Source of the DNA: Kudoa neothunni
Taxonomy: Eukaryota; Animalia; Cnidaria
DNA: 64,000 nucleotides
NCBI GenBank assembly: GCA_964304625.1
Contig: OZ199839.1
Location: 10,837,186-10,901,185 of the forward strand
Direction of reading: 5' to 3'
The notes beneath the pieces were generated by a model, which searched no databases, was not told the origin of the DNA, and saw only the letters and a program-made list of their open reading frames with translations. Each line of letters starts with the position of its first letter. Positions within the stretch are counted from its first letter, which is position 1. The position numbers and the translations under genes were made by a program. Of this stretch, positions 36,763 through 63,903 are shown one piece after another.

Positions 36763-39696
36763 ATGTATAATTATTTTGTATTTTTCGTTGTGAATATTGG
36801 CTTTTTATGTAACAAATTGTATATGATCACATGTTAAATTTATTGTCACAGTTAATGATAAATATTGTGCCGAAACAATCCCCCAAACTTCTGAAAAAGT
36901 CCTTTCATATCTTATTGCAGACAACGATAAAGTTCAACTGATTTTATCTGGCTCAATATACGAAGCAACTTCGAAAAAATGCCTTATAAAAAAGGAAAAC
37001 GATTCTATTAACGGATTCATTGACTTTAATCCTTGTAATGGAAATGAAGACGCTAGTACACCTAGGAAATGTGTTCGTACATGCACCCAAGATAACAATA
37101 AGTTGGCATTCAATGTGTTATCGCCTAGAACCAAATATATTTATGTGTATTCAGGAAATGAAGTAAATGCAGTAAAAGAAAATATCAAGGGTGGAGAAGT
37201 TTTTGGGCTTTCGACACGTACTTTAAATAAAATCTTTTTTTATAATAAATTAAATATAGCACTTTTGGTAAACCCAATTATCACAATTACCACAGATGCT
37301 CAGAAACTAAAGCTTGAAACTAAAACATGTGCAAAAGTTAATTGCCCCATTTATTACAAAGATGTGAAATATGCAGATGGTACGGCAGGAGGAAACTGTG
37401 ATGCTCCTAATACAGCAAATACAGTTGATTTTGACATAATGATATCGTATTATGAGGTAAAATGCAGTAACTATCCTAGTTTCTTTTACGAAATGCCGAA
37501 TCCATATATGAAAAAGAATATTGATGTTTATAAACCACAATATTATGTGACAATGAAAAACCGCGATAATGAAAACAAAAAATATCTCTTAAAATTTACC
37601 AACCCAATCCCGACTGAGATATGTTTGTTCAATATTAAAGATGCGGCGACTGGTGCTTCTGGAGAGACGGCGAGTTATGCATCAGCGTGTGGAAATGTAG
37701 CCCCAAAGGAATGTTATGCGCCTTGCGATAATGTCGAATTAACACTCTCTGAAATGAAACCTATTGTTAAAATATTAATTCAAACTAGGCATCATGAACC
37801 AGGAAAAACTGATACAAACTTAGACGGTTATGAAGAGAAAAAATTTGGTATTACATTAAAATAAATTTATCAATCACAATTTATAGCTATCGTTGAGGCT
37901 GCTGGTGCAAGTACACTCTTTTCTTCACCCACAACAGGGGGCATAACTTTTAGTCCTTCTCCTTATGATCCTAGTAATAATGGTGCAGTAAAATTCACCA
38001 CTTGTGCTTTGAAACATTCTCCCGCCGACATACCAAGGCCGGCCACGGTTAACACGGAAACTCAATGCACGAGTGGTAAATGTGATACAGCTTGTGCGAC
38101 AAGTTCGGTTATAACGGGGCTAAATGCAGGAAAAGCATACATTATTGAGATTACACCAACAGACATATCGACTCACAGCGGCTTTAAAGAATATTTATTT
38201 TTCAGAACAAGTAACTAATCATATTTTTTATAATTAAATAATATTTGTGAAAAGGTGCTTCATCAAACTTGGCTGCCACATCTCCTACACCATCCGACGT
38301 GAGTGTTGCAGTTAAAGCGATTGATGGTGACATAAGCACGGCAGATACCGAACCAACCTGCTCATATTACATAAGTGAAACTGGTAAGGAAGCATTCGTA
38401 GAAGCACAATGCGAGGATAGTGATCCATGTAGAGGATTTTGTAAAGAAACAAAGAAACTGATCAACTTAAATCTTAATACAAGATATGATATTAAGGTCG
38501 TTTCAAACAAAGATTATGGCATTAAAAAATATGAAAATGTTGCCACTAGTATGTCTTGACAATCACAATTAGATTTAACACATTATTAGCATGGTCAACT
38601 CTTACATTATCACATACGTTCATGGACAAGGGTTTTAAAGTGGTTGGTACCTTAACATCACCATATCCAAAAGCATTATGTCATTATAAAATTAATGTTA
38701 AAAACGATCAAACTTCAAAAGAGGTTTATTCATGTCCAGCAGTTGTTTCACCCCCTCCAAATGTTAGTCCGCCAAATTCCAACAATGAACAATCATCTAG
38801 TTCATCTCAACAACAGAAACTACAGACATCTCATTTATTCGGTGATAATAAATTAGCTGAGATATATGTTGCGAGAGCGGCTACTACTGAGAATAATGTT
38901 GGAAGTTCGTCTACGACCATTCAAAATACAAATGTTCCGCCAAAGATCCCATCATGCACCGAACCACCGCTTTGCACTAAGATATTATTTAGTGAGGGGT
39001 ACGAAGCGGATAAAGAATACGAGGTTTTGGTGACAGCTGCAGAAAGATCAACCGAAGTTCTTATAAATATTCCTAAAAGTATTTTAAAAATATAATTTTA
39101 TCTACTTTTTTTAATATTAATAATTAATATAGATATGCCTCCAGAACAGCCTAGTGAGGCAGAAAGAGAAATAGCTGTTATCATTATAAGGGAGGGAGAT
39201 ACACTAAAAATCTCTTCATTGCTACCCAAGGGTAGGGATGATAACGCAAAATGCAAATGGATATTAAGAAACACGAGCGAGACATCACAGTTAATAATGA
39301 AAAAATGTGTGACAGAACGTACTACCGGTTGCGTTCTTCCGACGTGCAAGTCCTTCACAATTGAAAACATACGTGACGAAAATGATTATCATTTAACCGT
39401 CATTTTGGCTAATGATGCTAAAGTCTTTGGTATCGGGAAAATTAAACGAGGTATTTAAAATCGAAAGAATAGTAATATAATTGATTATTTAGGAGAAATT
39501 TCAAATCAATCAAGGTAAATGAATTAATAATAACAAACTATAATATATATTTAGGGCGAGTTCGACCATGTATTAGATTTATATTTGATGTTATAAAGTT
39601 AAATCATACTTTAGGATCATTTCTATTGTCATTCCAGTTGTTATCATTGTGGTAGGAGTTGGATTTTATTTTGGTTACTGGAAGAATAAAGGATAA
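36763..39696 (+). CDS. Type I membrane protein with ~7 Cys-rich fibronectin-III-like domains, copy A (10 exons, ~850 aa)
   Basis: Signal peptide MYNYFVFFVVNIGFLFNDKYCA. Phase-1 exons end in FN3-like 'ITGLNAGKAYIIEI', 'LINLNLNTRYDIKV', 'IENIRDENDYHLTV'. Two microexons follow, then TM helix IISIVIPVVIIVVGVGFYFGYW and tail KNKG*. The gene model is strong; the fold call is inference. Confidence 0.85.
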
Positions 39697-41749
39697 GCAT
39701 AGACAGCTCAAATATTCATTCAGAAATTAATTTATTACTCTCCTTTATTTTTAATTATTTCACATATTTTATATTTTAAAATAATATTTTTCGCAAAATT
39801 ATAACAATACATTGTTATTTTATTTAAGGAAGTTTCCATTATATGATTAATATAACCTATAAATAATATTTATAGTTTAAGAGTATACAATCAACGACGG
39901 TTATTGCATAAGCGAATATTGCGCTCTTTTTGTTGTGTCATTATTTTGTCATTTATAAATCCCGGATATATCTTGTAAGTCTGATAATGTAGTAAAAAAC
40001 ATGTGAAATTATTTATTTAAGAATTTTTTTATAACTAATAGAAAATGGATATTGCGCGGTAATTTTAGTCACCGTTAAATTGATAAATATCACAAAATAG
40101 AAGTTAAGTATTATTATTTAATGACTCCAATTTTAAAGAAGTAGACCAAAATTAAACGTTGGTATTGATTTTTTTTAATTTCCATATTTATAATCATGAA
40201 TGGGGGTTAATTTCTTATATAACAAAAATTTTCCTATTAATATATGTGGTTAAACATATTTTGTTTATAATTATAAATCTTATTCACACACATAAATTTG
40301 TTAAAAACTTGGTTTCATTACATATTGTTCTTTAAATATGAGTAGATTCGTTAATTATAAATATTAAGTATGATTATTGTATATATATCGAAAAACTAAA
40401 ATGATAACAAATGTTTTGTACGCTTTCAATATTAGATTGTATTAGGGCCATATTAACTCCTATGTACTGCATAAAATGGAAACATACAGAATATATTTCT
40501 TTATTAAAAGAGGAGTTGTAATTGCTGATAAAATTCAAAAAATTTTAAAAGACAATTCAGAAATTGTTCTTACTCAATTTGTGTAACTATTACAAATAGA
40601 TGATGCCTATAATATGGGTGAAATTGAAGAATTTATAATTAAAAAAAGTATGAACTTAATTATTAAAAATAAATATATTTCTTTTATACATATCTCCTTG
40701 AGTGATTAGTATTATTGATAAAATTAATGATAAATGAAATACACGTGATCTGAGAGAATCCTAGAAAATTGTGACCACCGGAAATCAGCCACAACACTAT
40801 AATTTAATTTTGCTTCCCTTACGTTTAAAAAATCATTAAAAATCTTTATTTATTGATTAATTACAAACTAAAGTGCCCCCCCCCCCTCAAAAAAAAAATT
40901 TGCACGTAACGTATATAATGGTTCAGGTGGGTTAATTCACTCATTAAACCTTATCTGGAGTAATAAAATGATTTAAAGACAAATAATTAGCACATACAAC
41001 AGTTTTCTAAATCATATTTGTATATTACATTAATCTCGAGACATAACTAAGTTTTTTTGTGTTTCCGCAATCTAACGGCTATATGGAGCAGAATATTTAT
41101 TTCCATCAACTTTAAACAATCTAAAAAATGAAAAGTAGCGGTCTATGGATATTTTCTATACTGTTTAAGTAAAGCTTTACATATAAAAAGAAAGTATTAT
41201 TGGAAACGAACGAAGATTTCGTTGTAATTACACGTGGTCGTGTAGCTTTACGGTTCTACAAATAAGAATATGTTATTTTGAATATACAAAAACCCGCAAT
41301 ATTTAATTATATTACAGCTAATTAGACAAATAGGAATTTTATCAACGAATTAAATTATAAAGAAATAAACAGACAAAAATTACATCGAGACAATGTAATT
41401 TAAGTGTGCTTGTTTCTCATTATGATGAAAATAAGTAATTTCTAAAAATAATTATAAATTTATTATAGGTGCTCTTTTTTTGATTAAAAATGAATTATGA
41501 ATTCTTATCATTAAAACGTGGGATATAACGGTTTAAAAAATCGACGATAAATAATAAATATATTCCATTGTTAACTACATATCTTTAAATAAAGTAAGAG
41601 AAAGAGCTAAAAAAATTTATAAACTAAAATACTATTATTAATTATTTAAAATAATGTTTCGTTACAAAAATCATAAATTGTTGACTTTACAATTGAAATT
41701 ATTTTTTGATACTGAAAATATGCTTATAATTATCATCGATAAACATTAA

Positions 41750-44700
41750 ACCTTACAGGACGGTGTTCGGAAAATGTACGTATGTTCCGGTATGAGGTCC
41801 GTGATTACCCCAACGGTTATTTCATTATGTAAGCGCAATTTTTATTATAACTACCATTTTATATTATTAATATATTATAAAGATATGGAAACAATTATTA
41901 GTTGGTTAAAATTATCTATATATTTTTGTAAAAAATGGATAGATTAGCAGAATTTTCTACTGAAGGCGAAGCTTCACAAAATGACTGTGACACTCTTGTA
42001 CGGCGCCGATGGGCAGTATAAAGTAGCTTTTCCATGACAATGATTAAACCATTCCGTAACATTGTTTGTATTCAAGAATATTTACAGGAACAGCTAGCTA
42101 CGTCAAGCCGCGTTTTCCGAACAACTCTCGTTAATCTTCGTATAGCGCAGAGGATTATAATTATAACAAAATTGTTATTTGTTGATAAACATAGAAAACA
42201 CATAATATAATATTTTTATTAATAAAATATTACATTGATTTTATTTTACATACCAATGAGAGAATTATTTATTCACTATAAAATAAAAAACTTACTTTTA
42301 AACTTGTAAGATTAAATTAATCATCGATGCATGTAAAGTCCGAAAAAATTGATATCCATATCTACATAGTTCGTTTATTGTATCTGAATATTTTTTCACT
42401 TAGAATAAATTTTTATTTCTATGTGATTTTAAAATTAAAAAATAATACGGAATATTAGCTCGGTGTTTTTTGGATAGTTTCATCGAAAGTCAATTCAAAA
42501 AAATATGATAAATCAAATCATAAACGGTGGTGAATATTTCGGAACTGAAATTATTGTATGCAGTAAATATTGGTCAGCGAAACATTTATTAATTTAAAAA
42601 ATATAAAAATTTAGAAAGGTTATTTTACTAAATTACAATGAAAATTTGTATTTATTTTAGTTTCTGTTTGGCTTTAGTTTCTTATCGTGGAATGTTAGAA
42701 TAATTGTGAGAAATTTGTCTGAAATTTTCATTTAAAATAAATCATAAAATTCAAACTGTTGTTATGTTGAACAAACATTGGTTTGAACACATCGAAAAGT
42801 TATGAAAAAACTATTTCTAATTTGAAAATCTTTTTAAATATGTATATAGTTAAAAATATTTTTTTATAATGCAATAAAAAAATGAGCCAATATAAAATAG
42901 ATTTCACTTTCGTTAGACAGGATAATAATTCAACAATAAACTAAGCATTCAAATCAACCTGGCAGTCTGGACAAATGATTATAATTTTCTGGGTTTTATG
43001 AAGTGAGAAAATTGGCTTGTTACAAGAAGAATATTTTGTTTTGGTTTTCCTTTCCATGTTACGTGGGAAACATACGCATTGTCCCTTTTTAGATGACGTT
43101 GAATCATTTTGCATATTTAAGTTGGAATTGGAGATAAAGCTATTGAATATTTTGACTCCGTATTGTAAATCTGAATGATACCTAGTAAAGGTTTCTTGAC
43201 GACACAATACGTTAGAGGTGATCAATTGAATCCCTAATTCTCGAAAGAAGGTTTGACATCGACTGCGATCATTCGAACGCCAATCAAGAAATCTGGTTGT
43301 CCATATAATATGTGCATTTAACGCAGATGTATGGATCAGATCCATGAAAACACGGGATGGCCAACGATTGGTTCTTCTATAACAACCATTAAGTTTGGTT
43401 ATCCGGTCTCCATTGTCAACTACTCATTTTGTGTGATTGTAATGAACGGTAAGTTCATGTTTTTTATCACCCCTTTCGATGGCACTATCATGGAATTCTG
43501 TTGATAATAAAATGACGTTTTTGTTTTTATTGAGAACATATGAAATTATAGTTAAGTCATCGGAGAAGCAAAACATTGAGGAATTTTCATCACGATCTTT
43601 TACACTAAGAATATTTTTTGGGATGTATCGGTTATTTTTTCGCATAGTTCCAGTCAGAGTTCAATCATTTTTCAGTAAAAATAAGGCTAGGGGAAGGAAT
43701 ATAAAAAGTTATCAGTCGTTATACCACGACGACTTCCATAATAAGGAGAAACTAAATCCTTGACGACTCGTTCTCCTTGTTTTTTCTCTCTGATACCGTT
43801 AACTTTACCAAGGTAAAGTTGGGTATTAATACGTATGATGTATCTGCATCTGAAGCCACCCATGACTTCACCCCGTAACAATCGGGTTTATTCTTCATGT
43901 AAATACGAAAAGAGCTCCTTCCGCGAAATGAAACCATTCTTTCATCTACAGTTATATGTGTGCCAGGCGAATAATTCCGTGTGAACGAGTAATTTAAATT
44001 ATCGGCGATTTCTTGCATTTCGTCAAATTTGTTGCCAGATGTTCTCAGTATTGATGTTCTCGTGAGTCGATCATCAAAACGGATCGTTCTGTATATCTGG
44101 CAAAAACAATCCCTCGATAGAGCCACAGAAAAAATGTTGTTTGAACAACGGGTTCAAATCACAAAGATTTTCGAGTGATAATTTGGCTCCATTACATCTG
44201 CCAGATATTATCATGATTCCAATAAAAGCCTTCAGCTCTTCCATTGTTATGGTATCCTTATCGCTATATTTTTCATTCGATAGGCAGTACTTATTGGTAA
44301 AATATAATATTTTTTCCAACATAATACTCGAAAAAATAGCGAGAATGTTTCCATAATTGGTTGTACATTTTTAGACTCTTCTGTAAGTCTAGGTTTTGGT
44401 AAGTCTAGATTGTGGCTTTTGTTTTTCCTCCTCATTTTTTCAATGCAACTCCATTTGAATCCAATGCTGGAGTCAGAAATTTCTATTAAATTTTCTAAAT
44501 CATCATTATCTTCATTGCAAGATGAGGGATCAATTGTTTCTACAGTATCATCGCAATCCGAAATATCAGTTAGCGGTCCCTCAAAATCAAGATCACTGTC
44601 GATTTCATCAATCTAAACAGGATCACTTAATAAATCGTCAGAATATTCGCTTGGCATCGCTCTATTAAAGTTTAATTAAAAAAGCAATAATTAATAATTT

Positions 44701-45097
44701 ATTTATATTGTACACAAACAACGTGGATTTAAATTTAAGCGTCTAATCCCTTAGTAATCTATGGGTATATATATTTATATTTTTCGGGCGATGATATAAA
44801 ATTATAGAAATACGAGCATTTTGATTTAAAATATAATTAAAACACATTTTTAATGAAGTTTCATTAATTATTTTATTTTTTTGTATTAATCTCAATTAAA
44901 AAGCTAGCTAAATAACCCCTTTGTCACAAATATTCACAAAAAAAGTAAGTTTATTTCGACTAATTTTAAATTTAAAAAAACTTGATACCTTCTTATGGAA
45001 TTCATGGGATTAAAAAAATTTTCGATTATAAAGCGAAGAAAAAACGCGAAAATACAAAAATTGTGGTCCGCTTGAACCCCACACCGTTCCGCGAGGG
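41750..45097 (-). mobile_element. piggyBac relic with both ends
   Basis: TTAA|ACCTTACAGGACGGTGT ... ACACCGTTCCGCGAGGG|TTAA. Motifs 'ITVDERMVSFRGRSSFRIYMKNKPDCYGVK' and 'ITTDNF'. Confidence 0.9.
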
Positions 45098-45479
45098 TTA
45101 ATAAATTAACCATGAATCACTTTTATTAATATAAAAATAGAAGATAGTTGAAATCAATGTTTAATTTCGTTCAACTTTTTTAACATAAAAATCACCAAAT
45201 AATGATAATACAATTTGATTTTGAGATATTGTTAAATTTAATGGTTACTAAGATTAGTGCGCAATATTCATTGAAAAACCCCACATGGTGATTGAATTTT
45301 AGCGCAGAGAATCCATTTTCTAATATTTGTAAAAAAAAATTTCTAACAAATAATTTCAAATGTTTCCTTAATAGTTTAATAAACCTATTAGATAGAAATG
45401 CATTTAATATTATGAAGAAATAATAACACACAACGAAAAGTGGGAAATATCTACCTACGAAATAACCTTTGTTGACTGT

Positions 45480-45855
45480 ACTATGAATTAGAGGGGACAT
45501 CATAATAAACCACCCAACTATGTATCTACAACATGTGTCTATGTTTATCCTTCATTTTTCAACTAGCTACCACATTGATGTAACTATAAAAACTTACTAA
45601 TTATTTAACTGTGGTAGAAAAAAAAGAAAACGCTAAATTGAATCACGCGATTCAAGCAAAAACGTACGCGAGGCCGAACCTCACGCGACTTTTTATTTTT
45701 CGTTTATTCGTAGTAATTGTGCTTGTAAATAATTTAAACGAGTAATTCTAACATTATATAATTTTTTAAATAATTTTAAAAATGATCGAAACTTTTTACA
45801 TGTAAAATAACTAATGAACATACGAGCGGTGCTACGTACGACCGGTCCATTACTG
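45480..45855 (-). mobile_element. Partial inverted copy of the 6596/47801 MITE family
   Basis: Ends TACGTACGACCGGTCCATTACTG|TA. The interior is the reverse complement of the 5' half of 47801-48480. Confidence 0.8.
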
Positions 45856-46130
45856 TAATTGTTTATATTTATATGCGAACGAGTAAGTTTGCTAATGCAT
45901 GCCTAAGGATATAAATTTTTTAGTATTTCCCTAAGAGTTATAATATATTTATAATAGAAGTAATGCCATTTTGTCAACCATTAAATTTTAAATGAAAATT
46001 AGAAATTCCTTAGCATATACAATAAAAATGATTTATCTAAGAAAACTGTGTTGCTTTAAAATAGTACTAAATTTTAGGTATGTCTACGAATATAAACGAT
46101 ATGGTCAATTTGATCAAAAGTTTGTCCTTG

Positions 46131-48480: not shown

Positions 48481-48540
48481 TAGATGGATTTATGGAAACA
48501 AATCTTATCAAAGATATAACTAAAAAAATAAAAAAAATTA

Positions 48541-49257: not shown

Positions 49258-50838
49258 TCAGGGGTTTCTTTCTGGGGCGTTATCAGTTTGTATATTATTT
49301 TCTGAACTTTCATTAACCGTTGGTTTCATTTGTCCAGTTTCATCAGCTCCTTCTGAAGATGTTTCAGTTGAGGTAGTGGTTACACTAGAGGAAGTATCAG
49401 TTGAGGAGACATCGGTGCTAGTTTCATTATCAGCTGTAGTAATTGGATCGATAGAGTCGTCCACCGGTGGATCTCTCACACTATCAATAATATTATTTTG
49501 AGAACAAATTTGACCAGATACGATGGAGGTTTTGAGATTTCAGCACTCTTACCAGAGCATACACCCATGCATTTATCCCTGGTTATGAATCTATTGTCAT
49601 TTCCTCCAATCCCTCTGTATATGAACGGCATACACGTGTTTGTATGACGATCAAAGTAATATCTGGCTAAAAATAAGTGCCCAACACCTTCACTTCTGCC
49701 GAGCCTGCAAATGTCATCAGCTTTTTTGTACTTAATACCATCTTCCTCATCTGAAGGCAAACCTAACAACCACCTTTTAATGATGAGTATATGTTATGGA
49801 AAATTACCTGTGTGAGTAGGGCATGAAGCAACACAATCGTCCAATGTTTCAAATGTATTAGCATTGTCTGGATGCTTACAATCTTCCGTTTCATAAACCT
49901 CACAGACCTTGGATGATTTTTTGTAAAAATATCTTTGGACAATCTTCCTGTCACATTTCATTTGGGAAATCCCTGAGTTACATTTAGGGTTGATGTCGGC
50001 AGGAGCACCTTAATCATTACAACTATTTTTTTAATGCTACTACTTCAATAAATTACTTAGACAAATGCTGGTGCATTGTTGCACTGAATCGAAAACTCCC
50101 ATTGTTTCGCCCTCATTTACCACAGCATGTACACATTTATGGGCTGTCATATCAGCAACAATCCCGATTACTTTGTGTGAGTCAATTGCTAGTTCCGGGT
50201 GGATACCACAATGGAAGCGATTTTTAACACCGTCAACAACGGCTATTTTTAAATTTACTGAAATAGAAATAATTTAGAAAAATACCAGCTTTTGCTTGTT
50301 GGCATTGTGACATAGAATCAAAAAAATTCTGTCCTCCTCCACATCCTTTGTACTCAAAGGTTAGACAAGAATAAGAGATGCTATTATTATCGTTAGTTTT
50401 TTTGAGGTAGTATTTGTTTACGACGACTCCTGTACATGGTGATGTAGGGGTTACATTGGGATTTGTCTCTGACTTAACTACAACAGCTTTAACTGCTATA
50501 TACACATCATCTTTTGATTTTTCCTCTTTAGAATATTATGTGTGACATCACAATAATGTTTATACTGTGATTTTCGCATTCATCTAAAGATTTGAAATTG
50601 TTGAAATCCATGCCTTTCCCCTTGTATTCAAATTCTGCACATTTTCCAGTGCTCTTAATTATTGTGTACCTTTTCACTGTAAATTTATCACTTAATTCTA
50701 TATTTTTTTCCTTTAGATCATCATATGACTGAAGATCCGTTTCTACAAAAGGTGAAGAATCATTATTAACAATAGATAGTTACCAAATGAACAGGCTGTG
50801 AAAAGTACAGCATAGGTGCTCCAATATAAAACATTCAT
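49258..50838 (-). CDS. Secreted five-Kunitz-domain protein with S/T/D/E-rich tail (Kunitz C), 7 exons
   Basis: Signal peptide MNVLYWSTYAVLFTACSF. Domain 5 reads CRLGRSEGVGHLFLARYYFDRHTNTCMPFIYRGIGGNDNRFITRDKCMGVC. Same intron positions as Kunitz B. Confidence 0.9.
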
Positions 50839-52687: not shown

Positions 52688-53281
52688 CAGAGGTTCTCAA
52701 CCGTTTTTTCAAATTTACCCCCGTAACTTGAAAATCAAAATCATATTTACCCTTAGTTTCTATATTGATTTAACTATAGCAGAGGCTATTTGAATGGTAA
52801 ATTCTGGTCCTAAAAAGCACGTATGCTTGCATCATGACAATTTTTAATCCCATCAACTCGCCCACAAGCTGTATACAGATTTTATTTTTTATATTTTGTT
52901 AAATCAATCTAATCTTTTCCTAATATTACGCTCTTAGGGGCTAGAAATAATTAATAATAGTCAAAACTAACGACATTAATATTATTTACCATGAAAATAG
53001 TCATTTTAAGTATTACTATTATTAAGCTACATCACTTAAAGATGAACGAGGCATAAAAAAGGAGACTAAGAATAGTTTTATAAATAGCTGTTAAAAACTT
53101 ATTCCTAAAAACATTTTAAGAATTTTTGAGAAATTCTTATTGAGTTTAATGCCCCTGAATAATATAATTCAATCGGGAAGTACGTCACAAACCCCATAAT
53201 GCAAAAATTCTCCCTATCTAATCTTGATGTTATTTAATTTATCCCTGCCATTTAAATTTTACCCCCGGTTGAGAACCTCTG
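52688..53281. mobile_element. hAT (Charlie-like) MITE
   Basis: Perfect TIR CAGAGGTTCTCAACCG / CGGTTGAGAACCTCTG. TSD GCTTACAT / ACTTACAT (7/8). Confidence 0.9.
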
Positions 53282-54558
53282 ACTTACATTAACATAATCA
53301 TTCCAAAAATTTGTATTTTATTTAATACAACGCCCAAACTTTATCCTTTTAATTATTAAAGTAAACTTTTTTTAATTTAAAATATGAAATATTAAAAGGA
53401 TTCTTAACATTGAACCAAAATCACATTTTGGTTAAAAATTTTTAGATTAATATCTTACGCTTAAAGTAGTGGTTACACATATTCTCTTTCAATAATTTCT
53501 TTTTTATGAATATTTTCATTATGAAATTATTTCCAATCAATATAAAAGTTTAAGTAAAATTTATTATATCACTTTATTAAAATTTTTCGAATATACTACG
53601 TTACATTTATTGTTTGATTGGCATACAGATGTCTGCATTTTCCAATTTTGTCTAGTTCAAATTTTCAATTGTTGAATGATAATTATATGTTATAGAATAA
53701 TTTTCGAAACTTTCTAAGAAGTTAAGAGGTTATCCATCAAAAGATCGTAATTATTAATGTATCATTATTTCAAAATATATTTAATTTGATCGATATAACA
53801 TTACTTTTAAAAATTAGTTATTTCGTTATATTTTATAATACATAGTTTTTACAAAAAATGTTAAAACGTTATATTCCATTTAAATAATTTTGCCATAATG
53901 TTAAAAATTTGAATAATTATTTCAAAAAGACAAATAGGGATTGTAAGCTTAATACAAAAAAGTTAAATTACTAACGATTTGAATAGCTGGGGAAATAAAA
54001 TGAGAGGAATATCAACAATTAACCGTACGTAACTAGGTCTAAAACTATTCCAATTATATTAGAGTAATGATCTAATATTTTATCATATTTTTTGAATAAT
54101 GAAGTTTTTCTATTATTTTGGATTTTTTTAATATCAATAATCGCAAAAAAATGAATGATGAACATGTATATAATTTACACGTATCGAGCACTGATGCATT
54201 ATACGTAACCGTTACTACCCCCATCAATGTATTCCATTAATTCCCCGAATTGCTCATGGCCAGTCAGTATCTTTATTTGGACGATTTCAGGATATTTACT
54301 AAATGTGTTTATAGTACACTGAATCATATGGATTATTTTATCTTGAATAATAATTTTATTAACTTGAAAACATAATATTCAATTATAAACAAATATACAA
54401 CAAAAAATTAAATAATTATAAGGAAGCTTAAGAATTAAGGATAAAATCATTAATCGGTAAAATATGAAATAAATCATATGTAGGGTTTTTAAAACTATAA
54501 GATGAATTCCAAACACCATTATTATTTTATGCTCAAAACAATTTTAGTTTATCTTGTA

Positions 54559-56130
54559 TCAATCAGTTTGTGCAGTCTGGCCTGTGGCATCTTCATTGTT
54601 TTCACCTGTTTCAGTCTGCTCCTCAGCTCCTTCTGAAGATGTTTCAGTTGAGGTAGTGGTTACACTAGAGGAAGTATCAGTTGAGGAGACATCGGTGCTA
54701 GTTTCATTATCAGCTGTAGTAATTGGATCGATAGAGTCGTCCACCGGTGGATCTCTCACACTATCAATAATATTATTTTGAGAACAAATTTGACCAGATA
54801 CGATGGAGGTTTTGAGATTTCAGCACTCTTACCAGAGCATACACCCATGCATTTATCCCTGGTTATGAATCTATTGTCATTTCCTCCAATCCCTCTGTAT
54901 ATGAACGGCATACACGTGTTTGTATGACGATCAAAGTAATATCTGGCTAAAAATAAGTGCCCAACACCTTCACTTCTGCCGAGCCTGCAAATGTCATCAG
55001 CTTTTTTGTACTTAATACCATCTGTCCTCATCTGAAGGCAAACCTAACAACCACCTTTTAATGACGAGTATATGTTATGGAAAATTACCTGTGTGAGTAG
55101 GGCATGAAGCAACACAATCGTCCAATGTTTCAAATGTATTAGCATTGTCTGGATGCTTACAATCTTCTGTTTCATAAACCTCACAGACCTTGGATGATTT
55201 TTTGTAAAAATATCTTTGGACAATCTTCCTGTCACATTTCATTTGGGAAATCCCTGAGTTACATTTAGGGTTGATGTCGGCAGGAGCACCTTAATCATTA
55301 CAACTATTTTTTTAATGCTACTACTTCAATAAATTACTTAGACAAATGCTGGTGCATTGTTGCACTGAATCGAAAACTCCCATTGTTTCGCCCTCATTTA
55401 CCACAGCATGTACACATTTATGGGCTGTCATATCAGCAACAATCCCGATTACTTTGTGTGAGTCAATTGCTAGTTCCGGGTGGATACCACAATGGAAGCG
55501 ATTTTTAACACCGTCAACAACGGCTATTTTTAAATTTGCTGAAATAGAAATAATTTAGAAAAATACCAGCTTTTGCTTGTTGGCATTGTGACATAGAATC
55601 AAAAAAATTCTGTCCTCCTCCACATCCTTTGTACTCAAAGGTTAGACAAGAATAAGAGATGCTATTATTATCGTTAGTTTTTTTGAGGTAGTATTTGTTT
55701 ACGACGACTCCTGTACATGGTGATGTAGGAGTATTACCAGAAGCTGGACTTGTACTTGCAGCCTCGCTAACTTTTTTGACAGCCTTATACACATCATCTT
55801 TTGATTTTTTCTCTTAATGATATATTATCATAATGAGCTCATAAACAATTTTACTATGATTTTCGCACTCTTCCAATGATTTGAAATTGTTGAAATCCAT
55901 GCCTTTTCCCTTGTATTCAAATTCTGTACATTCTCCAGCTACGAGCTTTATCTTGTACCTTTTCACTTTATACCCATCACTTAATTCTGTATTTTGTCCA
56001 GTTGGCTCATTATATGAGGTCAAATCTTCCTCTAAAGCCGAACGATTGGTTAACTGACTTTATTGAAGGATCTACCAGACAAGACCAAAGTAAAGAATGC
56101 TGCAAATAAGTAAACGCCAACAAGCTTCAT
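54559..56130 (-). CDS. Five-Kunitz-domain gene (Kunitz D) with a 1-bp frameshift before domain 5 (truncated allele, pseudogene or assembly error)
   Basis: Signal peptide MKLVGVYLFAAFFTLVLS. Paralog of Kunitz C. An extra base at ~55024 gives GLPSDEDRWY* instead of GLPSDEEDGIKY. Confidence 0.85.
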
Positions 56131-56584
56131 TAGAGAGATTTAATGATATTCAATAACTATTCTTAGACAATGAGTGTATTGATGTCTATTTAATCGGATT
56201 TATATTTATAGATGAAAAAGAGAATCTGAATAGACCTCAAAAGTGAAATATCAAGCGGAATATCAAATCATTAACGATTAAGAAAAGAAATTTTTTAAAC
56301 TTAAGAAATTATAAACTATTTAATTAAGCGATTAAATCCATCATTCTAGACTCCACTGAATACGTTAGATACCATTAACTCATTAACACTCATACTGAGT
56401 TTGTGGTAAAAGGTGACCCCAGAGAAAAGTTCACTTTTTAAAAACTATATTGATCAGCATTAAAAATTAAAAATTTATCGTTCTAAATTCACCTCTATAT
56501 ATGTCATTTTATATTTTAAAATATGGTTATTATATTTGAACCTATTCCGTTTTTATTCATGTATTAACTTAAATTCACCTTTAA

Positions 56585-58920
56585 CCCTCTAACGAACTTG
56601 AGGTCTTTTGGATCCCAAACCGGTATTAAACGAGGTATAGAATTTTATGTAGTAGTTCGCAAAACTTTTTATCCTGGCTATTCTCATAAATTTATAATAC
56701 TTAAAACTTACCAAACTTTGGACAAAAAATAAAAATAATATAGCTCAGAAAAATAAAATTATCCTTTAACGAACTTGGGGTCTATAAGACCCCAATTTTT
56801 GTTGTTTGGTTATTATTAAAAAAATATAAAATGCTTAAAAACTGTTGAACTACATTTCTTACATCATTTTATAACAATAAATTATATTTCGAAAGTGTTT
56901 ATTATTTTCTTAATATCGATGAAGTTTTGGGAAATACATTTTTAATACACATGAACCCTACATTACTGGCAGGTTTGAAACTAAATGATATTTTTATATT
57001 GAGATGATGTTCTTATTTAACTTTTACTTCCTTCAGCATTGATGATTTTTAACCAAAAAAACGATATCACCCCATATGGTTACTTCGATGGGCGAGTGAG
57101 TTATATTTTTTGAAGCGTGATGAGTAGTTCGGAGGAATACATCGATGAGATCGAATCGTCTGTTAGTGAATTAGATGATTTTTTGTGTGAGGTATCCGAC
57201 AATACGAAAGGAATGTCAGATTACGAATGTCCTACAGATGCTACGATAGACAAAAATGGAACGGCGTGGACTTTGAAAAGCCCCCTTCGTCGAAAGTTTG
57301 TCTTGAAAATACACTTTCTTCCCGATCTGATCCAACGGCATATTCAGTTCAAAGAATCAAATACATTGAAGATTATTTCACAATATTTTTTACAAATAAT
57401 ATTTGTGGTGAAATAATAAAATAAACAAATGAATTTGGAAGAGGTCGCTTCAGAGATTCTTGGACTGATCTAGATGATATTGAGTTAAAGGCATATTTGG
57501 GAACACTTGCTTTGATGGCTGCTCATAAAGATCGAGAGGAGCCTTTAGTCGAGCTGTTTAATCTTTACGAAGGAAATGAATTATATCGTCAAATTTTTTC
57601 TTATAACCGCTTCAGATAAATAACGAGATCTCTGCAATTTGATGATGCAAATATTAGGGTTCAAAGAAAGGCGACTGATAAATTCTATGCCATCCGTATT
57701 GTATGGAATATGTGGGTTGACATTTTGCCGTTGTGTTTCTCTCCTAATGAGGATATAACTGTAGATGGGCAGTTAGTGCCATTTAGGCAATATATTCCAT
57801 TAAAACCAGCCAAATAGGGTTTAAAATTCTTTCTGCTGGCGGACCCAAAGGATAAATATGTTCTTAACGTCTCTCCATATCTTGGAAAAAACGGAAGTGA
57901 AGCTAGTCGAACCTTAAACGTGGGTGAAATCATTGTACTTTTTCTGACAACCCTATTTCACTATTCTGAAAGAACAGTTGTTGCAGATAATTTTTTCACT
58001 TCTGGGGTTAACAACAAAATTACTGGCGAAACAGTTAACATATTTGGGAAACATTCGTCACAACAAACGAGATCTGCCATCTTGTGTTCTTTCAAACAGA
58101 TGCAAAGAATTGTACAACACCACGTTTGCGTTCTTCAAAAAAATATATTGACATCATACGTAAACAAAAAAAGTAAGGCTGTTATTATATTATCAACTGG
58201 CACCAACAATACAGATACAGACAAGGAAATGGGCAAAAATAAGCCAGTAACTATCTTACACTACAACAGAACAAAGGGTGGTGTAGATACCATTGATAGA
58301 ATGTTGTCGTCTGTTTCAGTTAGAAGATTTACTCGACGATGGCATTTGATTGTATTTTTTAATATGGTCGACTTATCTTTAACCAATGCTTTTGTGCTAT
58401 TTAAATATATTTTTTGTTGAACAAAAAAAATGCGACGTCAATTTATGAAAGAGATGGCCCAAGTCCTTTTACCGACCATTCCTTGCTAAAAATACACTTG
58501 ACAAGAAAATTATCAAAAGGAGTCATTCAGCTCTCTCCGCTAAACCAGTCTTTGCAGATTCTAATTTGAAAGAATCGATGCGAATTTCGTCCTCGAGAGA
58601 CTGATGAAAAAAACTAACATCCACTGTGGTAGCTGTGGTAGCTTTTTCTGTAGAGATCATTCATCAAAAAAAAGTAAGTTTTGTTGAAACTAATACTAGT
58701 TTTATATAACAATATAATTTGTATTGTTTTTATTATTTTGCGTTATTAGACTTGTTTCATGTTACTGCCCGAATGTTTACGAAACGCTGTTTAAGGCAAC
58801 CGAGTCAGATTAGATGATTAATGGTTTTATGAAATGTAGTTTCTCTGAAAATTCATTCGATAAAAATTCTTTATAGTTTTATTATCGCTTAATAATATTT
58901 TTTTTTGATATGATTATGCA
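56585..58920 (+). mobile_element. piggyBac relic lacking its right terminus, related to 25652-27697
   Basis: TTAA|CCCTCTAACG with an internal repeat at ~56762. Motifs 'VVADNFFTS' and 'YNRTKGGVDTIDRMLSSVSVRRFTRRW'. Confidence 0.9.
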
Positions 58921-58928
58921 ATAAAAAC

Positions 58929-60481
58929 GGTAATGAGGGAGTATACGCCTCACCAAATTTAACCTTTTCCGCATGCTCGGCGGTCCCGATTTTATTCCAA
59001 CCTTGTTTTACATTATTTTTAAATATTGAGTGAACAGAAGGAAATCAAAAATCATTATCTTAAAAAACATGACAACATCTGCCCTTCGGGTTAAATCGGG
59101 ACGCACACGCTTGTGCGCATTTGGGTTTTCCGTTGCTTTCGACTCTATATGATCATTTAAACAATTTTTATACAATTGGTTTCTTTAAATTGGACAATAA
59201 TGACCATATTCTTAATTAGCGAATACAATTAAAATTGACCCTATTGATTATTTTAATTTTTTTGATTTACCGGTGTTTCAGAGCCAGTAGGTTACTTTGG
59301 GCGTTATATTTAATATCAATAATAGATACTATAATATATTATGTATGGAACTCCTAGCCCCGTTCATAAATTTCATCAAACCCTATAATTTAACCGATAG
59401 AATAGAACATTTTGAGAGGTATGATGTTTTCATAATCTTATTAAGCAGATTTGCAGAAAATATTCTTTCAGGGTTAAAGTTTATTAATAAGTATCAAAGT
59501 TAAAGGAGTGTATTTTTAAAAATAACAGTTCATATGGTATAAATGTTTAAACGTGAATAATTTTGTTGAGCATGGAAAAATTAATTAAATCACGAAGCGG
59601 AAATTAGCATTTACAATAATATATATTGACATGAAATTTCAGTTGTATAAATGATTCCAAAGTTAATATTGCCACATCGTATTAAATCTATGCAACAACT
59701 GTATTATGAACCATTTTGATTGTTTTTAATATTTATTCATTTTTTCCATCTGATAACATTAATTTATTGTTTAACATATTTGGAATTTATGAATTAAAAA
59801 TAATACAACATATCTTCTCCCAAAATTTCATTTTACTTAATAACATTAAAGTGATTTGAGTAATAATGTATTTTGTAGACATAATTATAACATCGATATC
59901 TAGAGGTGTCTTTTAACTCTTAAATTAAAAAAATTTAATTATTAGATATTAATAATTTAGAAAAAAAAATTTCTAAGATAAAATTCCAACAAAAATAGCA
60001 ATAAAAGAAACATATAATCACATGCTATTGTATTTTCATGATCATTTCGTCACCGACCATTATCAAGACATCAGAAAAATATATAAACTAAAGCTAATTT
60101 ATTGAAATTTCACAGTAACTTTTTAATTTTAGGAATTGAAATCTATCATATACAAATTGCGTTTTCTTCCTATAACCTTTTGAGTATATACAGCATAACA
60201 ATAATAGGCTGTTTTACATTGAATAAAAAATAATAAAAAGAAACTAGTTGTATAAAAGTTGTTTAAATGATCAAATAGAATTGAAAACAACCGAAACCCA
60301 AACGCGCGCGCCGATTTGCGTCGAAGGACAGATGTTGTCATGTTTTTTAAGATAATGATTTTTGATTTCCTTCTGTTCACTCAATATTTAAAAATAATGT
60401 AAAACAAGGTTGGAATAAAATCGGGACCGTCGAGCATGCGGGAAAGGTTAAATTTGGTGAGGCGTATACTCCCTCATTACC
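58929..60481. mobile_element. Foldback-like non-autonomous element with ~250-bp terminal inverted repeats
   Basis: 58929-59185 is the reverse complement of 60238-60481. The outer ~160 bp has about 3 mismatches. Termini GGTAATGAGGG (Merlin- or Mutator-like); no TSD. Confidence 0.85.
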
Positions 60482-60961
60482 GGAAAAAATGAAGAATGTT
60501 TTCTCAGAAATAAGCTGAAGATTTTACTTTTGAGACTAAGATGCTTTGAATGATTTCTACTCAATGATTGACCAAATGTCTAAAAATATAAAATCCATGG
60601 AGAAAAGTATTTTATAACAGATTATTTCAGAATATAAATGTCAAGTGGTTTGTTTCAAAGATAATTGAGTTTTATCTTTCATGCGCATGTGATTAAATGA
60701 ATATTTCGCAACAACTCTGTTGACTGTATTTCTTTATTTATATGAAACATTAAATTTTTTTAATCGAATTGTATGTAAAATATTTCATGGCAACAATAAA
60801 CTAATTATTTTTATTTTAATGCATTTTTGATTTTTTACATGTTTTGTGCAACCTATAATATTTTGCCTTCATTAACACATGAATAGGCTTATACTTACAT
60901 GAATAGTTATTGTTTATTCAGAATGTGTAATACAGTCTAATTTACTTCCTATTTTACAAAT

Positions 60962-63903
60962 ATGGATAATCATTTGGCATTTTTTGTTGTAATTATTGGC
61001 CTATTATGTAATGAGTTATATGAGATCACATGTTAAATTTATGTTCATAGTTATTGATAAATATTGTGCCGAAACAACCCCCAAAACTCCTGAAAAAGCC
61101 GAAAAAGCCCTTTCATATCTTATTGCAGACAACGATAAAGTTCAACTGATTTTTTCTGGCTCAGTGTATACAACTGGCTCTAAAAAATGCCTTATAAAAA
61201 AAGAAAACGATCCTATTAACGGATTTATTGACATTACTCTTTGCAGTGGAAGTGGTATGACCTCTGCAGAAGGAAAATGTGTCCTTACATGTACTGAAGA
61301 AAACAACAAATTGGCATTCAATGTTTTATCGCCTAGAGCCAAATATATTTATGTGTACTCAGGAGATAATGACAGCGACGTAAAACAAAATGCAAACGGC
61401 GGAGAGGTTTTTGGGTTTTCGATTCGTATTTTAAATGAAATCTTTTTTTATAATAAATTAAATATAGCACTTTTGGTAAACCCAATTATCACAATTACCA
61501 CAGATGCTCAGAAACTAAAGCTTGAAGCTAAAACATGTGCAAAAGTGGATTGTCCCATATATTACAAAGATGTAAAATATGCAGCTGGTACTGGAACAGG
61601 AAACTGTGAAACTGCTAATACAGCAAATTCAGTTGATTTTGACATTATGATACCTCATTATGAGATGAAATGCATTAATTATCCCAGTTTCTTTTACGAA
61701 ATGCCAAATCCATACATGAAAAAGAATATTGACATCTATAAACCACAATATTATGTGGCATATAAAACCGACGATAACAAAAAATATCTCTTAAAATTTA
61801 CCAATCCATTCCCAGCTGAGATATGTTTGTTCAATATTAAAGATGGGGCGACTGCTGCTTCCGGAGATACGACGAGATATGCATCAGCGTGTGGAAATGT
61901 AGCCCCAAAGGAATGTTATGCACCTTGTGATAATGTCGAACTTACACTCTCTCAAACTAAACCAATTGTTAAAATATTAATTCAAACTAGGCATCATAAA
62001 CTAGAAGAAACCAGTGGTAGCTTCGAGGGTTACGAAGAGAAAAAATTTGGTATTATATTAAAATAAATTTATCAATCACAATTTATAGCTATCGTTGAGG
62101 CTGCTGGTGCAAGTACACTCTTTTCTTCACCCACAACAGTGGGCATAACTTTTAGTCCTTCTCCTTATGATCCCAGTAATAATGGTGCAGTAAAATTCAA
62201 CATTTGTGATTTGAAACACTTTCATGCTGACAAACCAAGGCCAACTTCCGGAGGAGGAATTGTAACCCAATGCACGAATGAAAAATGTGGTACAACATGT
62301 GCGACAAGTTCAGTTATAAAGGGACTAACTGCAGGAAAAGCATACATTATTGAGATTACACCAGCAAATTTAGACAGTTACACCGATTTTAAAGAATACT
62401 TGTTTTTTAGAACACGTAACTAATCGTATTTTTTTATAATTAAATAATAAATATGAATAGTTGCATCATTAAACTTGGCTGTCACATCTCCTACACCAAC
62501 CGACGTGAGTGTTGCAGTCAAAGCGATTGATGGTGACGTAGGCAAGACAGTTAACGAACCAACTTGCTCATATTACATAAGTGAAACTGGTAAGGAATCA
62601 TTTGTAGAAGCCGTCTGCGAGGATAGTGTTCCATGTAGAGGATTTTGTAGAGAAACAAAGAACCTGATCAATTTAAATCCTAAAACAAGTTACGATATTA
62701 AGGTCGTTTCAAACAAAGATTATGGTATTAAAAAATATGAAAGTGTTACCACTAGTATATCTTGATAATCGAAATTAAATTTAACTCACTTATTAGCATT
62801 TTCAACTCTTACACTTTCACGTACGTTCTTGGACAAGGGTTTTAAAGTGGTTGGTACCTTAACATCACCATATCCAAAAGCAGTATGTCATTATAAAATT
62901 AATGTTAAAAACGATCAAACTTCAAAAGAGGTTTATTCATGTCCAGCAGTTGTTTCACCCACTCCAAATGTTAGTCCGCCAAATTCCAACAATGGACAAT
63001 CATCTAGTTCATCTCAACAACAGAAACTACAGGCATCTCATTTATTCGGTGATAATAAATTAGCTGAGATATATGTTGCGAGAGCGGCTACTACTGAGAA
63101 TAATGTTGGAAGTTCGTCTACAACCACTCAAAATACAAATGTTCCGCCAAAGATCCCATCATGCACCGAACCACCGCTTTGCACTAAGATATTATTTAGT
63201 GAGGGGTACGAAGCGGATAAAGAATACGAGGTTTTGGTGACAGCTGCAGAAAGATCAACCGAAGTTCTTATAAATATTCCTAAAAGTATTTTAAAAATAT
63301 AATTTTATCTACTTTTTTTAATATTAATAATTACTATAGATATGCCTCCAGAACAGCCTAGTGAGGCAGAAAGAGAAATAGCTGTTATCATTATAAGGGA
63401 GGGAGATACACTAAAAATCTCTTCATTGCTACCCAAGGGTAGGGATGATAACGCAAAATGCAAATGGATATTAAGAAACACGAGCGAGACATCACAGTTA
63501 ATCGTGAAAAAATGCGAGACAGAACGTACTAATGGTTGCGTTCTTCCGACGTGCAAGTCCTTCACAATTGAAAACATACGTGACGAAAATGATTATCATT
63601 TAACCGTCATTTTGGCTAATGATTCTAAAGTCTTTGGTATCGGGAAAATTAAACGAGGTATTTAAAATCGAAGGAATAGTAATATAATTGATTATTTAGG
63701 AGAAACTTCAAATCAATCAAGGTAAATGAATTAGTAATAACAAACTATAATATATATTTAGGGCGAGTTCGACCATGTATTAGACTTGTATTTGATGTTG
63801 TAAAGTTAAATCATACTTTAGGATCATTTCTATTGTCATTCCAGTTGTTATCATTGTGGTAGGAGTTGGATTTTATTTTGGTTACTGGAAGAATAAAGGA
63901 TAA
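60962..63903 (+). CDS. Type I membrane protein with ~7 Cys-rich fibronectin-III-like domains, copy B (10 exons)
   Basis: Same exon-intron structure as 36763-39696. Signal peptide MDNHLAFFVVIIGLLFIDKYCA; identical TM helix and KNKG tail. Confidence 0.85.

What the first reader, a model, noticed from the sequence alone, without database searches (positions are those of the whole stretch)
36763..63903. Candidate variant surface-protein system: paralogous receptors with CDR-like hypervariable loops on a conserved scaffold
Seen: copies A (36763-39696) and B (60962-63903) are both intact and alternate between near-identical framework blocks and short, almost fully replaced patches. Examples (A vs B): DFNPCNGNEDASTPRKCVRT vs DITLCSGSGMTSAEGKCVLT; GNEVNAVKENIKGG vs GDNDSDVKQNANGG; HHEPGKTDTNLDGY vs HHKLEETSGSFEGY; HSPADIPRPATVNTETQCTSGKCD vs HFHADKPRPTSGGGIVTQCTNEKCG; PTDISTHSGFKEY vs PANLDSYTDFKEY. 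Cysteines are conserved. The adjacent introns 2 and 3 differ by only 2/42 and 1/39 nt, so these exon patches are more diverged than the introns. Variation is highest in membrane-distal domains 1-5 and vanishes at the TM helix and tail. Established: this pattern marks diversifying selection in variant antigens and in immune or allorecognition receptors. Inference: an uncharacterised antigenic-variation or host-recognition family.
Basis: partly seen in the sequence, partly recalled or inferred. Interest (0 to 1): 0.9.

Follow-up and report, generated by a model that had tools for sequence, protein, structure and literature searches.

The report
Kudoa surface-protein family shuffled by gene conversion
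Two of four neighbouring, intact copies of a very large, undescribed membrane-protein family in the tuna muscle parasite Kudoa neothunni differ in patches because weakly constrained surface loops sit on a conserved scaffold that the copies keep exchanging; tests found no positive selection, and antigenic variation could not be tested.

Summary

They are two of four tandem paralogues. The family has at least 185 members in a 40.26-Mb genome that matches the published Kudoa neothunni assembly. The scan has flagged this FN3-like family on other DNA of this genome many times.

Each protein has a signal peptide, about seven cysteine-stapled Ig/FN3-like modules, two micro-exons, a transmembrane helix and a 4-residue tail.

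Two processes explain the patchwork:
- **Selection:** the scaffold is under purifying selection (dN/dS about 0.2-0.4). The loops are near neutral (0.56-0.71, below 1) in independent paralogue pairs.
- **Gene conversion:** three incompatible groupings of the four copies occur in long runs (p<1e-4). The 3' half is homogenised, introns included.

So the near-identical introns 2 and 3 lie in the best-conserved stretches of the mosaic, and the membrane-distal gradient comes from homogenisation of the 3' half. Neither is evidence of diversifying selection.

A host-facing surface repertoire is plausible. Antigenic variation is untested, because no RNA data exist. No named homologue was found, and the papers searched do not describe the family.

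The parts
36763..39696 (+). Gene A, 10 exons: 36763-36808, 36852-37217, 37260-37847, 37887-38210, 38255-38548, 38590-39078, 39133-39450, 39493-39514, 39555-39569, 39615-39696. Encodes 847 aa: signal peptide, modules D1-D6, TM helix, 4-residue tail.
   Evidence: All introns are GT-AG, the frame is intact, and the domain introns are phase 1. No RNA support was available.
60962..63903 (+). Gene B, 10 exons: 60962-61007, 61051-61425, 61468-62049, 62089-62415, 62461-62754, 62797-63285, 63340-63657, 63700-63721, 63762-63776, 63822-63903. Encodes 849 aa.
   Evidence: Model transferred from A through the four-way DNA alignment. Frame intact, all introns GT-AG, intron lengths within 1 nt of A's.
36640..36762 (+). 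Conserved upstream block (probable promoter or 5'UTR), 87-91% identical in the four cluster genes.
   Evidence: A whole-genome DNA search finds it only upstream of A, B, C and D; see also the alignment.
36852..37217 (+). Exon 2, module D1 (membrane-distal). Contains two variable patches at 37022-37081 and 37154-37195.
   Evidence: In 9 independent paralogue pairs, patch dN/dS is 0.67 against 0.29 in the scaffold.
37218..37259 (+). Intron 2: 42 nt, in frame and free of stop codons in A.
   Evidence: This stretch is unalignable among paralogues and carries a stop in most of them. A homologue from another organism (P0002) lacks these 14 residues.
37260..37847 (+). Exon 3, module D2: 195 aa, 8 invariant Cys, two beta-sandwich subdomains. 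This is the family's signature domain. Includes a variable patch at 37790-37831.
   Evidence: Alignment A2. AF2 model with pLDDT 62. Fold matches to Ig-like and FN3 domains. 185 exact motif hits in the genome.
37887..38210 (+). Exon 4, module D3 (FN3-like). Holds the most diverged patches, at 38015-38086 and 38156-38194.
   Evidence: No other place in the genome holds A's or B's version of the patch.
38560..39740 (+). Homogenised 3' tract: D5 (exon 6, begins at 38590), D6, micro-exons, TM exon, 3'UTR and the introns between them. A is 97-100% identical to the other copies here. B and C are identical for about 1.3 kb (A coordinates 38234-39533), and B, C and D are identical for 600 nt (A coordinates 38434-39033).
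   Evidence: synonymous divergence 0.004-0.08 against 0.24-0.31; Fisher p <= 1e-11.
39493..39569 (+). Two micro-exons (22 nt and 15 nt) with the intron between them. They lie just before the TM exon.
   Evidence: The micro-exon sequences and the TM exon with its short basic tail are conserved in six distant paralogues, while the introns between them diverge.
39615..39696 (+). Exon 10: TM helix and a 4-residue cytoplasmic tail.

Best explanation
A and B are two of four tandem, intact members of a lineage-specific family of at least 185 genes, probably several hundred, in the myxozoan Kudoa neothunni. The genes encode type I membrane proteins. Each has a signal peptide, six exon-encoded cysteine-stapled Ig/FN3-like modules (the second is a double sandwich), a Ser/Pro/Gln-rich stretch, two micro-exons, a TM helix and a four-residue tail.

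Two demonstrated processes produce the patchwork. (1) The beta-strand and cysteine scaffold is under purifying selection, while the inter-strand loops are only weakly constrained and evolve nearly neutrally. (2) Gene conversion or unequal crossing-over among the tandem copies is frequent. It homogenises long tracts, introns included, and re-deals loop versions among copies in different combinations.

Inferred, not shown: the proteins form a diversified surface coat or adhesin repertoire at the parasite's interface with its host. They do not signal through their own tail.
For: Genome identity: 40,260,978 bases, three chromosomes and a fourth contig of exactly 18,219 bp, with window GC of about 0.24-0.37. 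These figures match the published K. neothunni assembly in PMC12239612: 40.2 Mb, N50 12.0 Mb, three chromosomes, an 18,219-bp mitochondrial contig, 30.4% GC and 49-nt median introns.
Family size and integrity: 121 scored of 688 candidates with exon 2+3. 185 exact motif hits against 0 for the control pattern. 113 of 120 D2 exons are full-length and free of stops. 150 scored of 309 candidates for D6, of which 148 are stop-free and lie about 2 kb downstream of D2 hits. The micro-exon and TM architecture is conserved in distant paralogues.
Fold.
Selection: whole-gene dN/dS is 0.43-0.56. Patch against scaffold is 0.56 vs 0.21 (D2), 0.67 vs 0.29 (D1) and 0.71 vs 0.42 (D3) in independent pairs. Ts/tv-weighted values for D2 are 0.71 vs 0.28. 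Site counting gives 0.66 vs 0.29 with no robust positive site.
Gene conversion: 124 informative sites support three incompatible splits in long runs, permutation p < 1e-4. The closest pair changes along the gene. Synonymous divergence drops from 0.24-0.31 to 0.004-0.08 in the 3' half. B, C and D have identical introns 4 and 5.
Against: No transcript or protein evidence exists for any member. The two RNA runs laid gave no reads, and the genome paper reports that very few host RNA reads mapped. So splicing, expression, surface location and host exposure are all inferred. Both structure models are of low confidence (pLDDT 59-62), and the fold matches are weak (Z < 8, TM 0.3-0.6). Inside the A-D cluster, patch synonymous divergence exceeds scaffold divergence (0.27-0.43 against 0.17-0.26). 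That could also mean that selection keeps old loop versions apart. Counting methods average over sites and are conservative, and recombination blurs the trees, so a few positively selected loop sites cannot be excluded. The D1 and D3 tests rest on only 9 and 6 pairs.
Confidence: 0.62

Rival explanations
1. One reading: a true variant-antigen or host-recognition system. Loops are driven apart by diversifying selection, segmental gene conversion makes new mosaics, and only one or a few members are expressed at a time.
For: The organism is a parasite of fish muscle. The family is very large and clustered, and this cluster lies among transposon remnants. Variation is concentrated in predicted loops. 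Loop versions are shared in different combinations among A-D. A's and B's D3 patch versions are unique in the genome. Patch synonymous divergence is raised within the cluster, as expected if old versions are retained.
Against: Patch dN/dS is below 1 in all three distal modules, with confidence intervals that exclude 1. No site-level signal would survive correction for multiple tests. All four copies are intact and each has its own upstream block, so there is no silent-cassette and expression-site layout. No shared upstream element was found across the family. No expression data exist.
Confidence: 0.18
2. A parasite-internal family with no role toward the host. Examples would be adhesion between the nested cells of the plasmodium, or spore-valve and sporogenesis proteins. 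Its loops simply drift, and its size reflects tandem duplication.
For: Loops are near neutral and the scaffold is constrained. The tail is four residues and carries no signalling motif. The scaffold is old: D2 from a distant relative is 33-39% identical, close to the 44% for an SNF5 exon from the same organism.
Against: Hundreds of intact copies (113 of 120 D2 exons and 148 of 150 D6 exons are free of stops) are hard to keep by drift alone. Families of this size are unusual for housekeeping adhesion in a genome of about 5,300 predicted genes.
Confidence: 0.15
3. An artefact: A and B are uncollapsed haplotypes or a false tandem duplication in the assembly.
For: The genome paper notes haplotypic duplication before purging.
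Against: The four copies lie on one Hi-C-curated chromosome, with different spacers and unrelated flanks. Synonymous divergence in the 5' half is 0.24-0.31. Contigs from short-read runs reproduce A-specific sequence exactly, although they are probably from the source study.
Confidence: 0.02

Closest known systems
Toxoplasma gondii SRS (SAG1-related sequence) superfamily (comparison from my own knowledge)
   Same: More than 100 genes, mostly in tandem arrays, for parasite surface proteins built from disulfide-stapled beta-sandwich modules with variable loops. Members are mostly intact, and the family evolves by duplication and exchange.
   Different: No sequence or Pfam relationship was found. 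SRS proteins are GPI-anchored, whereas these have a TM helix and a 4-residue tail. SRS proteins have one or two modules, these about seven. The host organism here is an animal (a cnidarian), not an apicomplexan.
Giardia VSPs, and the VSP-like genes reported in the myxozoan Sphaerospora molnari (preprint 10.64898/2026.02.11.705288)
   Same: A large family of type I membrane proteins with a variable ectodomain, one TM helix and a very short tail. The S. molnari genes were proposed as an immune-evasion repertoire in a myxozoan.
   Different: As defined in that preprint, VSPs have more than 10% cysteine and repeated CXC or CXXC motifs. These proteins have 29 Cys in about 847 residues (3.4%) and a beta-sandwich architecture.
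Mosaic-forming antigen families: Plasmodium var, Trypanosoma VSG, Borrelia vlsE (from my own knowledge)
   Same: Segmental gene conversion among paralogues produces mosaics of variable blocks on a conserved frame.
   Different: There is no sign of an expression site fed by silent cassettes: every copy is a complete gene with its own upstream block. dN/dS is not above 1. Switching has not been tested.
Hydractinia Alr allorecognition genes, a cnidarian Ig-superfamily cluster (from my own knowledge; not compared by sequence here)
   Same: Both are cnidarian, clustered type I membrane proteins made of Ig-like modules. The membrane-distal part is the most variable, and paralogues recombine.
   Different: Alr proteins have long cytoplasmic tails with signalling motifs, whereas the tail here has four residues. 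This family is far larger.
Fibronectin type III and Ig-like domains (Pfam PF00041 and relatives)
   Same: Predicted beta-sandwich modules of about 100 residues, one per phase-1 exon. The best structural matches are FN3 domains, cytokine-receptor modules and C2-set Ig domains.
   Different: No Pfam model matches. The modules carry extra conserved disulfides. The structure models are of low confidence.

Membership tests
FN3 / Ig-like beta-sandwich domains | Sequence match to a curated domain model (such as PF00041 fn3) | tested here: not met
   No fn3 or Ig model matched any of the five domain exons, even at E <= 10.
FN3 / Ig-like beta-sandwich domains | Seven-strand beta-sandwich fold | tested here: inconclusive
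   The AF2 models are all-beta but have pLDDT of only 59-62. For D3 the best matches are FN3 domains and monobodies, with TM 0.45-0.6 and E >= 0.06. D2 splits into an Ig-like half (Z 6-7.6) and an FN3-like half (Z about 6), both below the Z = 8 caution line.
Variant surface antigen system (var / VSG / VSP type) | Large paralogous family of surface-anchored proteins | tested here: met
   At least 185 motif copies. Signal peptide, TM helix and short tail are present in the cluster genes, and the TM anchor recurs in distant members. The surface location itself is inferred.
Variant surface antigen system (var / VSG / VSP type) | Variation concentrated in exposed regions of a conserved scaffold | tested here: met
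   The high-entropy columns across the family coincide with the A-D patches and with inter-strand, low-pLDDT segments.
Variant surface antigen system (var / VSG / VSP type) | Positive or diversifying selection on the variable regions (dN/dS > 1) | tested here: not met
   Patch dN/dS is 0.56-0.71, with confidence intervals below 1. It is 0.71 with ts/tv weighting. In the site count, 4 of 215 columns are nominally positive and none would survive multiple-test correction.
Variant surface antigen system (var / VSG / VSP type) | Segmental gene conversion that makes mosaics | tested here: met
   Three incompatible splits occur in runs of 4-17 informative sites, p < 1e-4. The 3' half is homogenised.
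Variant surface antigen system (var / VSG / VSP type) | Mutually exclusive or switching expression | not testable with these tools
   No listed holder of the stretch is on record as RNA, and the two RNA runs laid gave 0 reads.
Giardia-type VSP | More than 10% cysteine with repeated CXC or CXXC motifs (definition quoted) | tested here: not met
   29 Cys in 845-849 residues, about 3.4%.
Toxoplasma SRS / apicomplexan 6-Cys | Match to the family's Pfam domain model | tested here: not met
   No Pfam match of any kind to the domain exons. No named homologue among 21 hits in 1.84 billion proteins; the 20 looked up are all unnamed.

The most novel reading that the evidence does not exclude
Kudoa uses this family of several hundred FN3-like genes as a true antigenic-variation system. 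Each plasmodium would express one or a few members, and gene conversion among tandem copies would keep producing new loop mosaics. As far as I know, that would be the first system of this kind in an animal parasite.
Probability: 0.12. Interest if true: 0.85.

Novelty: new variant of a known kind. Interest (0 to 1): 0.5.

Why it matters
Myxozoans are economically important fish parasites, and how they persist in immunocompetent hosts is largely unknown. This family has at least 185 mostly intact genes against about 5,300 predicted genes in the published annotation. That would make it one of the largest parts of the Kudoa gene repertoire. The genome paper does not mention it. It has no named homologue in the collections searched.

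The four-gene cluster is a clean case for measuring gene conversion in a myxozoan. It also gives concrete targets for testing whether these parasites vary their surface: conserved membrane-proximal modules for antibodies, and copy-specific loops for expression typing. The negative result matters too. Patchy divergence next to near-identical introns is not in itself evidence of positive selection in a family that undergoes gene conversion.

Tried and rejected
- **Pfam on the five domain exons:** only sub-threshold chance hits.
- **Word-indexed protein search with exon 2+3:** nothing, but only proteins of 0.55-1.75 times the query length were seen.
- **Language-model atlas search with D2:** no usable lead.
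- **ESM Atlas shape search with D2:** only generic FN3 and secretion-tail sandwiches, TM <= 0.47.
- **RNA evidence:** no listed holder of the stretch is on record as RNA, and the two RNA runs laid gave 0 reads. The best holders turned out to be genomic contigs that run through the introns.
- **Donor search for the D3 patches of A and B:** none anywhere else in the genome. Import from a distant paralogue is therefore rejected for these patches.
- **Family-wide promoter element:** rejected. The upstream block occurs only at the four cluster genes.
- **Haplotype or assembly artefact:** rejected.
- **Other family fragments or pseudogenes between A and B:** none.
- **tRNA genes in the window:** none.
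- **Paper search for the three sample accessions that hold homologues:** nothing.
I did not see it on reading the sequence. The plain micro-exon model is conserved in distant paralogues.
- **Joined protein:** the spliced protein was never sent to any search, fold or database tool. All such calls used single exons by reference. The joined coding sequence was used only inside local scripts, for translation, dN/dS and a local comparison with the 84-kb neighbourhood.


Full report
**Observation**

The window holds a 3.2-kb direct duplication, 36555-39793 against 60753-64000, at 90% identity. I built gene models using GT-AG introns of 39-54 nt.

The 42-nt second intron is in frame and has no stop codon in A. 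I treat it as an intron for two reasons. That stretch cannot be aligned among paralogues and carries a stop in most of them. A homologue from another organism lacks exactly those 14 residues.

The intron figures of 2/42 and 1/39 are right, and each copy has 29 cysteines.

**Which genome this is**

The assembly has 40,260,978 bases in four contigs: 17.15, 12.04 and 11.05 Mb, with a remainder of exactly 18,219 bp. Introns are about 40-50 nt, and GC in the window runs from about 0.24 to 0.37.

PMC12239612 describes a Kudoa neothunni assembly recovered from Thunnus albacares sequencing data. It reports 40.2 Mb, N50 12.0 Mb, three chromosomes, an 18,219-bp mitochondrial contig, 30.4% GC and 49-nt median introns. 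I take the identity as settled. Earlier notes of this scan had suggested the same species.

That paper does not use the words 'gene family', 'surface' or 'orphan' anywhere. It states that very few host RNA reads mapped to the parasite.

**Anatomy of the gene**

The product starts with a short hydrophobic signal peptide. Six exon-encoded modules follow, D1 to D6, and every module intron is phase 1. D5 contains a Ser/Pro/Gln-rich stretch. Two micro-exons of 22 and 15 nt come next, then an exon for a TM helix and a four-residue tail.

In six distant paralogues the micro-exon sequences and the TM exon with its short basic tail are conserved, while the introns between them have diverged. This supports the model by comparison.

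No Pfam model matches any module. AlphaFold models of D2 and D3 are all-beta but of low confidence, with pLDDT of 62 and 59. D2 behaves as two sandwiches:
- Residues 1 to about 85 best match C2-set Ig-like and similar domains (Z 6-7.6).
- Residues about 92 to 195 best match FN3 domains (Z about 6).
- The whole of D2 resembles two-module cytokine-receptor regions.

The best matches for D3 are FN3 domains and monobodies. These matches are weak, so I call the modules Ig/FN3-like by prediction only.

**A large family**

- Exon 2+3 of A finds 121 scored matches among 688 candidates in the genome. The four best lie in tandem: A, B and two further copies, C and D, 6 and 12 kb beyond the window's end.
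- A back-translated motif from D2 occurs 185 times. The reversed control pattern occurs 0 times.
- Of 120 D2 exons fetched, 113 are full-length and free of stops.
- D6 gives 150 scored matches of 309 candidates. Of these, 148 are stop-free and typically lie about 2 kb downstream of a D2 hit on the same strand.

The family therefore has at least about 185 members that share one architecture and are mostly intact. Many lie in regular tandem arrays. The window around A and B is otherwise full of piggyBac-type transposase fragments, and it also holds a MULE/FAR1-like fragment.

**Relatives elsewhere**

A profile of D2 searched against 1.84 billion proteins found 21 hits. The 20 I looked up are unnamed singletons from ENA or Logan assemblies. 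The six I traced come from three samples.

In one of those samples an SNF5 exon is only 44% identical to the Kudoa neothunni gene, and the D2 domains are 33-39% identical. The scaffold is therefore old and is shared with at least one distant relative. I could not name that organism.

**How the patchwork arises, part 1: gene conversion**

All four cluster genes are intact. Along the alignment the closest pair keeps changing. B and D are closest upstream and through much of D2. C and D are closest in the D3 patch. B and C are identical for 1.3 kb from D4 onward.

Of 124 informative sites, 50, 50 and 24 support the three mutually incompatible groupings. They occur in runs of up to 17 sites, with 99 adjacent same-pattern pairs against 44 ± 5 expected (p < 1e-4). 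Loop versions are shared in different combinations. One D2 loop version is common to B and C. One D4 loop is common to A and D against B and C. The D3 patch is common to C and D.

Synonymous divergence falls from 0.24-0.31 in the 5' half to 0.004-0.08 in the 3' half (Fisher p <= 1e-11). Introns 4 and 5 are identical in B, C and D. Only recent exchange can make introns and synonymous sites identical.

Introns 2 and 3 lie in the two best-conserved stretches of the gene's 5' half, in a gene whose tracts are demonstrably exchanged. Short introns are also constrained by their own splice signals. Introns 1, 4 and 5 differ between A and B by 13-21%.

It also explains the apparent gradient toward the membrane. 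Outside the cluster, D6 is no better conserved than D1-D2: 56% against 64% identity to the next relatives.

**How the patchwork arises, part 2: selection**

Whole-gene dN/dS among A-D is 0.43-0.56. In sliding windows the patches reach about 0.8-1. However, synonymous differences there are high too; for example pS is 0.80 and pN is 0.54 in the D3 patch of A against B.

Choosing patches and testing them on the same four genes would be circular. I therefore defined patch columns from A-D and tested them on other, phylogenetically independent close pairs:

| Module | Pairs | Patch dN/dS (95% CI) | Scaffold dN/dS |
|---|---|---|---|
| D2 | 34 | 0.56 (0.50-0.62) | 0.21 |
| D1 | 9 | 0.67 (0.52-0.89) | 0.29 |
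| D3 | 6 | 0.71 (0.57-0.87) | 0.42 |

Weighting sites by the measured transition bias (kappa 2.3) raises the D2 values to 0.71 and 0.28. A tree-based count of substitutions on 113 D2 copies gives 0.66 and 0.29. In that count, 132 of 215 columns are significantly negative and only 4 are nominally positive, fewer than chance allows.

The loops are therefore weakly constrained, and I found no evidence that they are driven apart. The variable columns coincide with predicted inter-strand and low-confidence segments. 'Variable loops on a conserved scaffold' is a fair description. 'Diversifying selection' is not shown.

One caveat remains. Within the cluster, patch synonymous divergence (0.27-0.43) exceeds scaffold divergence (0.17-0.26), and A's and B's D3 patch versions exist nowhere else in the genome. 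Old loop versions have thus escaped homogenisation. There are two possible reasons: selection may favour keeping them distinct, or conversion tracts may simply stop at stretches that are strongly diverged and rich in indels. My data cannot separate these.

**Function**

The following points are shown:
- an extracellular-type architecture;
- a membrane anchor conserved across the family;
- a tail too short to signal;
- very many intact copies;
- a constrained scaffold.

From these I infer a diversified surface coat or adhesin repertoire at the host interface. In general logic it is closest to the Toxoplasma SRS family. It shares the mosaic-forming habit of classical variant antigens but not their expression-site layout: each copy is a full gene with its own upstream block, and that block occurs only in this cluster.

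Expression could not be examined. The best holders of the sequence are genomic contigs, and the two metatranscriptome runs laid gave no reads.

**Novelty and relation to earlier notes**

The scan has flagged this FN3-like family repeatedly on other DNA of the same genome. My D2 motif hits fall inside several of those places. One earlier follow-up reached a similar verdict: a variable binding site is possible, and antigenic variation is not shown.

Neither the genome paper nor a 2026 preprint on surface families in Sphaerospora molnari describes this family. I class it as a new variant of a known kind, namely the expanded surface-protein families of parasites.

**Method note**

All searches, fold jobs and database calls used single exons by reference. 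The joined spliced protein was not sent to any such tool. It was used only inside local scripts, for translation, dN/dS and a comparison with the 84-kb neighbourhood.

Noticed in passing
window 9607-10038(-), 15857-16222(-), 26761-27477(-), 34102-34440(+), 43752-44126(-), 57920-58420(+): Six ORF fragments match the piggyBac-type transposase model DDE_Tnp_1_7 (E from 3e-5 down to 1e-34). The gene cluster sits among transposon remnants.
   Followed up: partly
window 13379-13783(-): An ORF matches ZSWIM3_N and, more weakly, FAR1 DNA-binding domains. This is a MULE-type transposase relative. A 2026 preprint reports expansion of MULE elements in several myxozoans.
   Followed up: no
window 49340-50728 and 54620-56017: A 1.4-kb direct duplication at 94% identity lies between genes A and B. 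Its content was not identified.
   Followed up: no
window 58928-59186 and 60237-60482; also about 9.7-11.3 kb beyond the window's end (upstream of copy D): An inverted repeat of about 250 nt (86-89% identity) lies just upstream of gene B, and a similar pair lies upstream of D. It could be a small foldback element or a boundary of the duplication unit.
   Followed up: no
window 37218-37259 and 39451-39492: Intron 2 is 42 nt, in frame and stop-free in A, B and D, so retaining it would add 14 residues. Retaining intron 7 would end the protein one codon into the intron, giving a secreted form without the TM anchor. Neither could be tested without RNA.
   Followed up: partly
window 39493-39514 and 39555-39569; loci L130-L135: Two micro-exons of 22 and 15 nt before the TM exon are conserved in sequence across distant family members, while the introns around them diverge.
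   Followed up: yes
loci L051, L052, L126-L129: Unnamed contigs from three public samples (SRR31175926, SRR33849685, ERZ795007) carry D2-type domains. The first belongs to a distant relative, with an SNF5 exon 44% identical. In the second sample, one homologue lacks the D1-D2 intron.
   Followed up: partly
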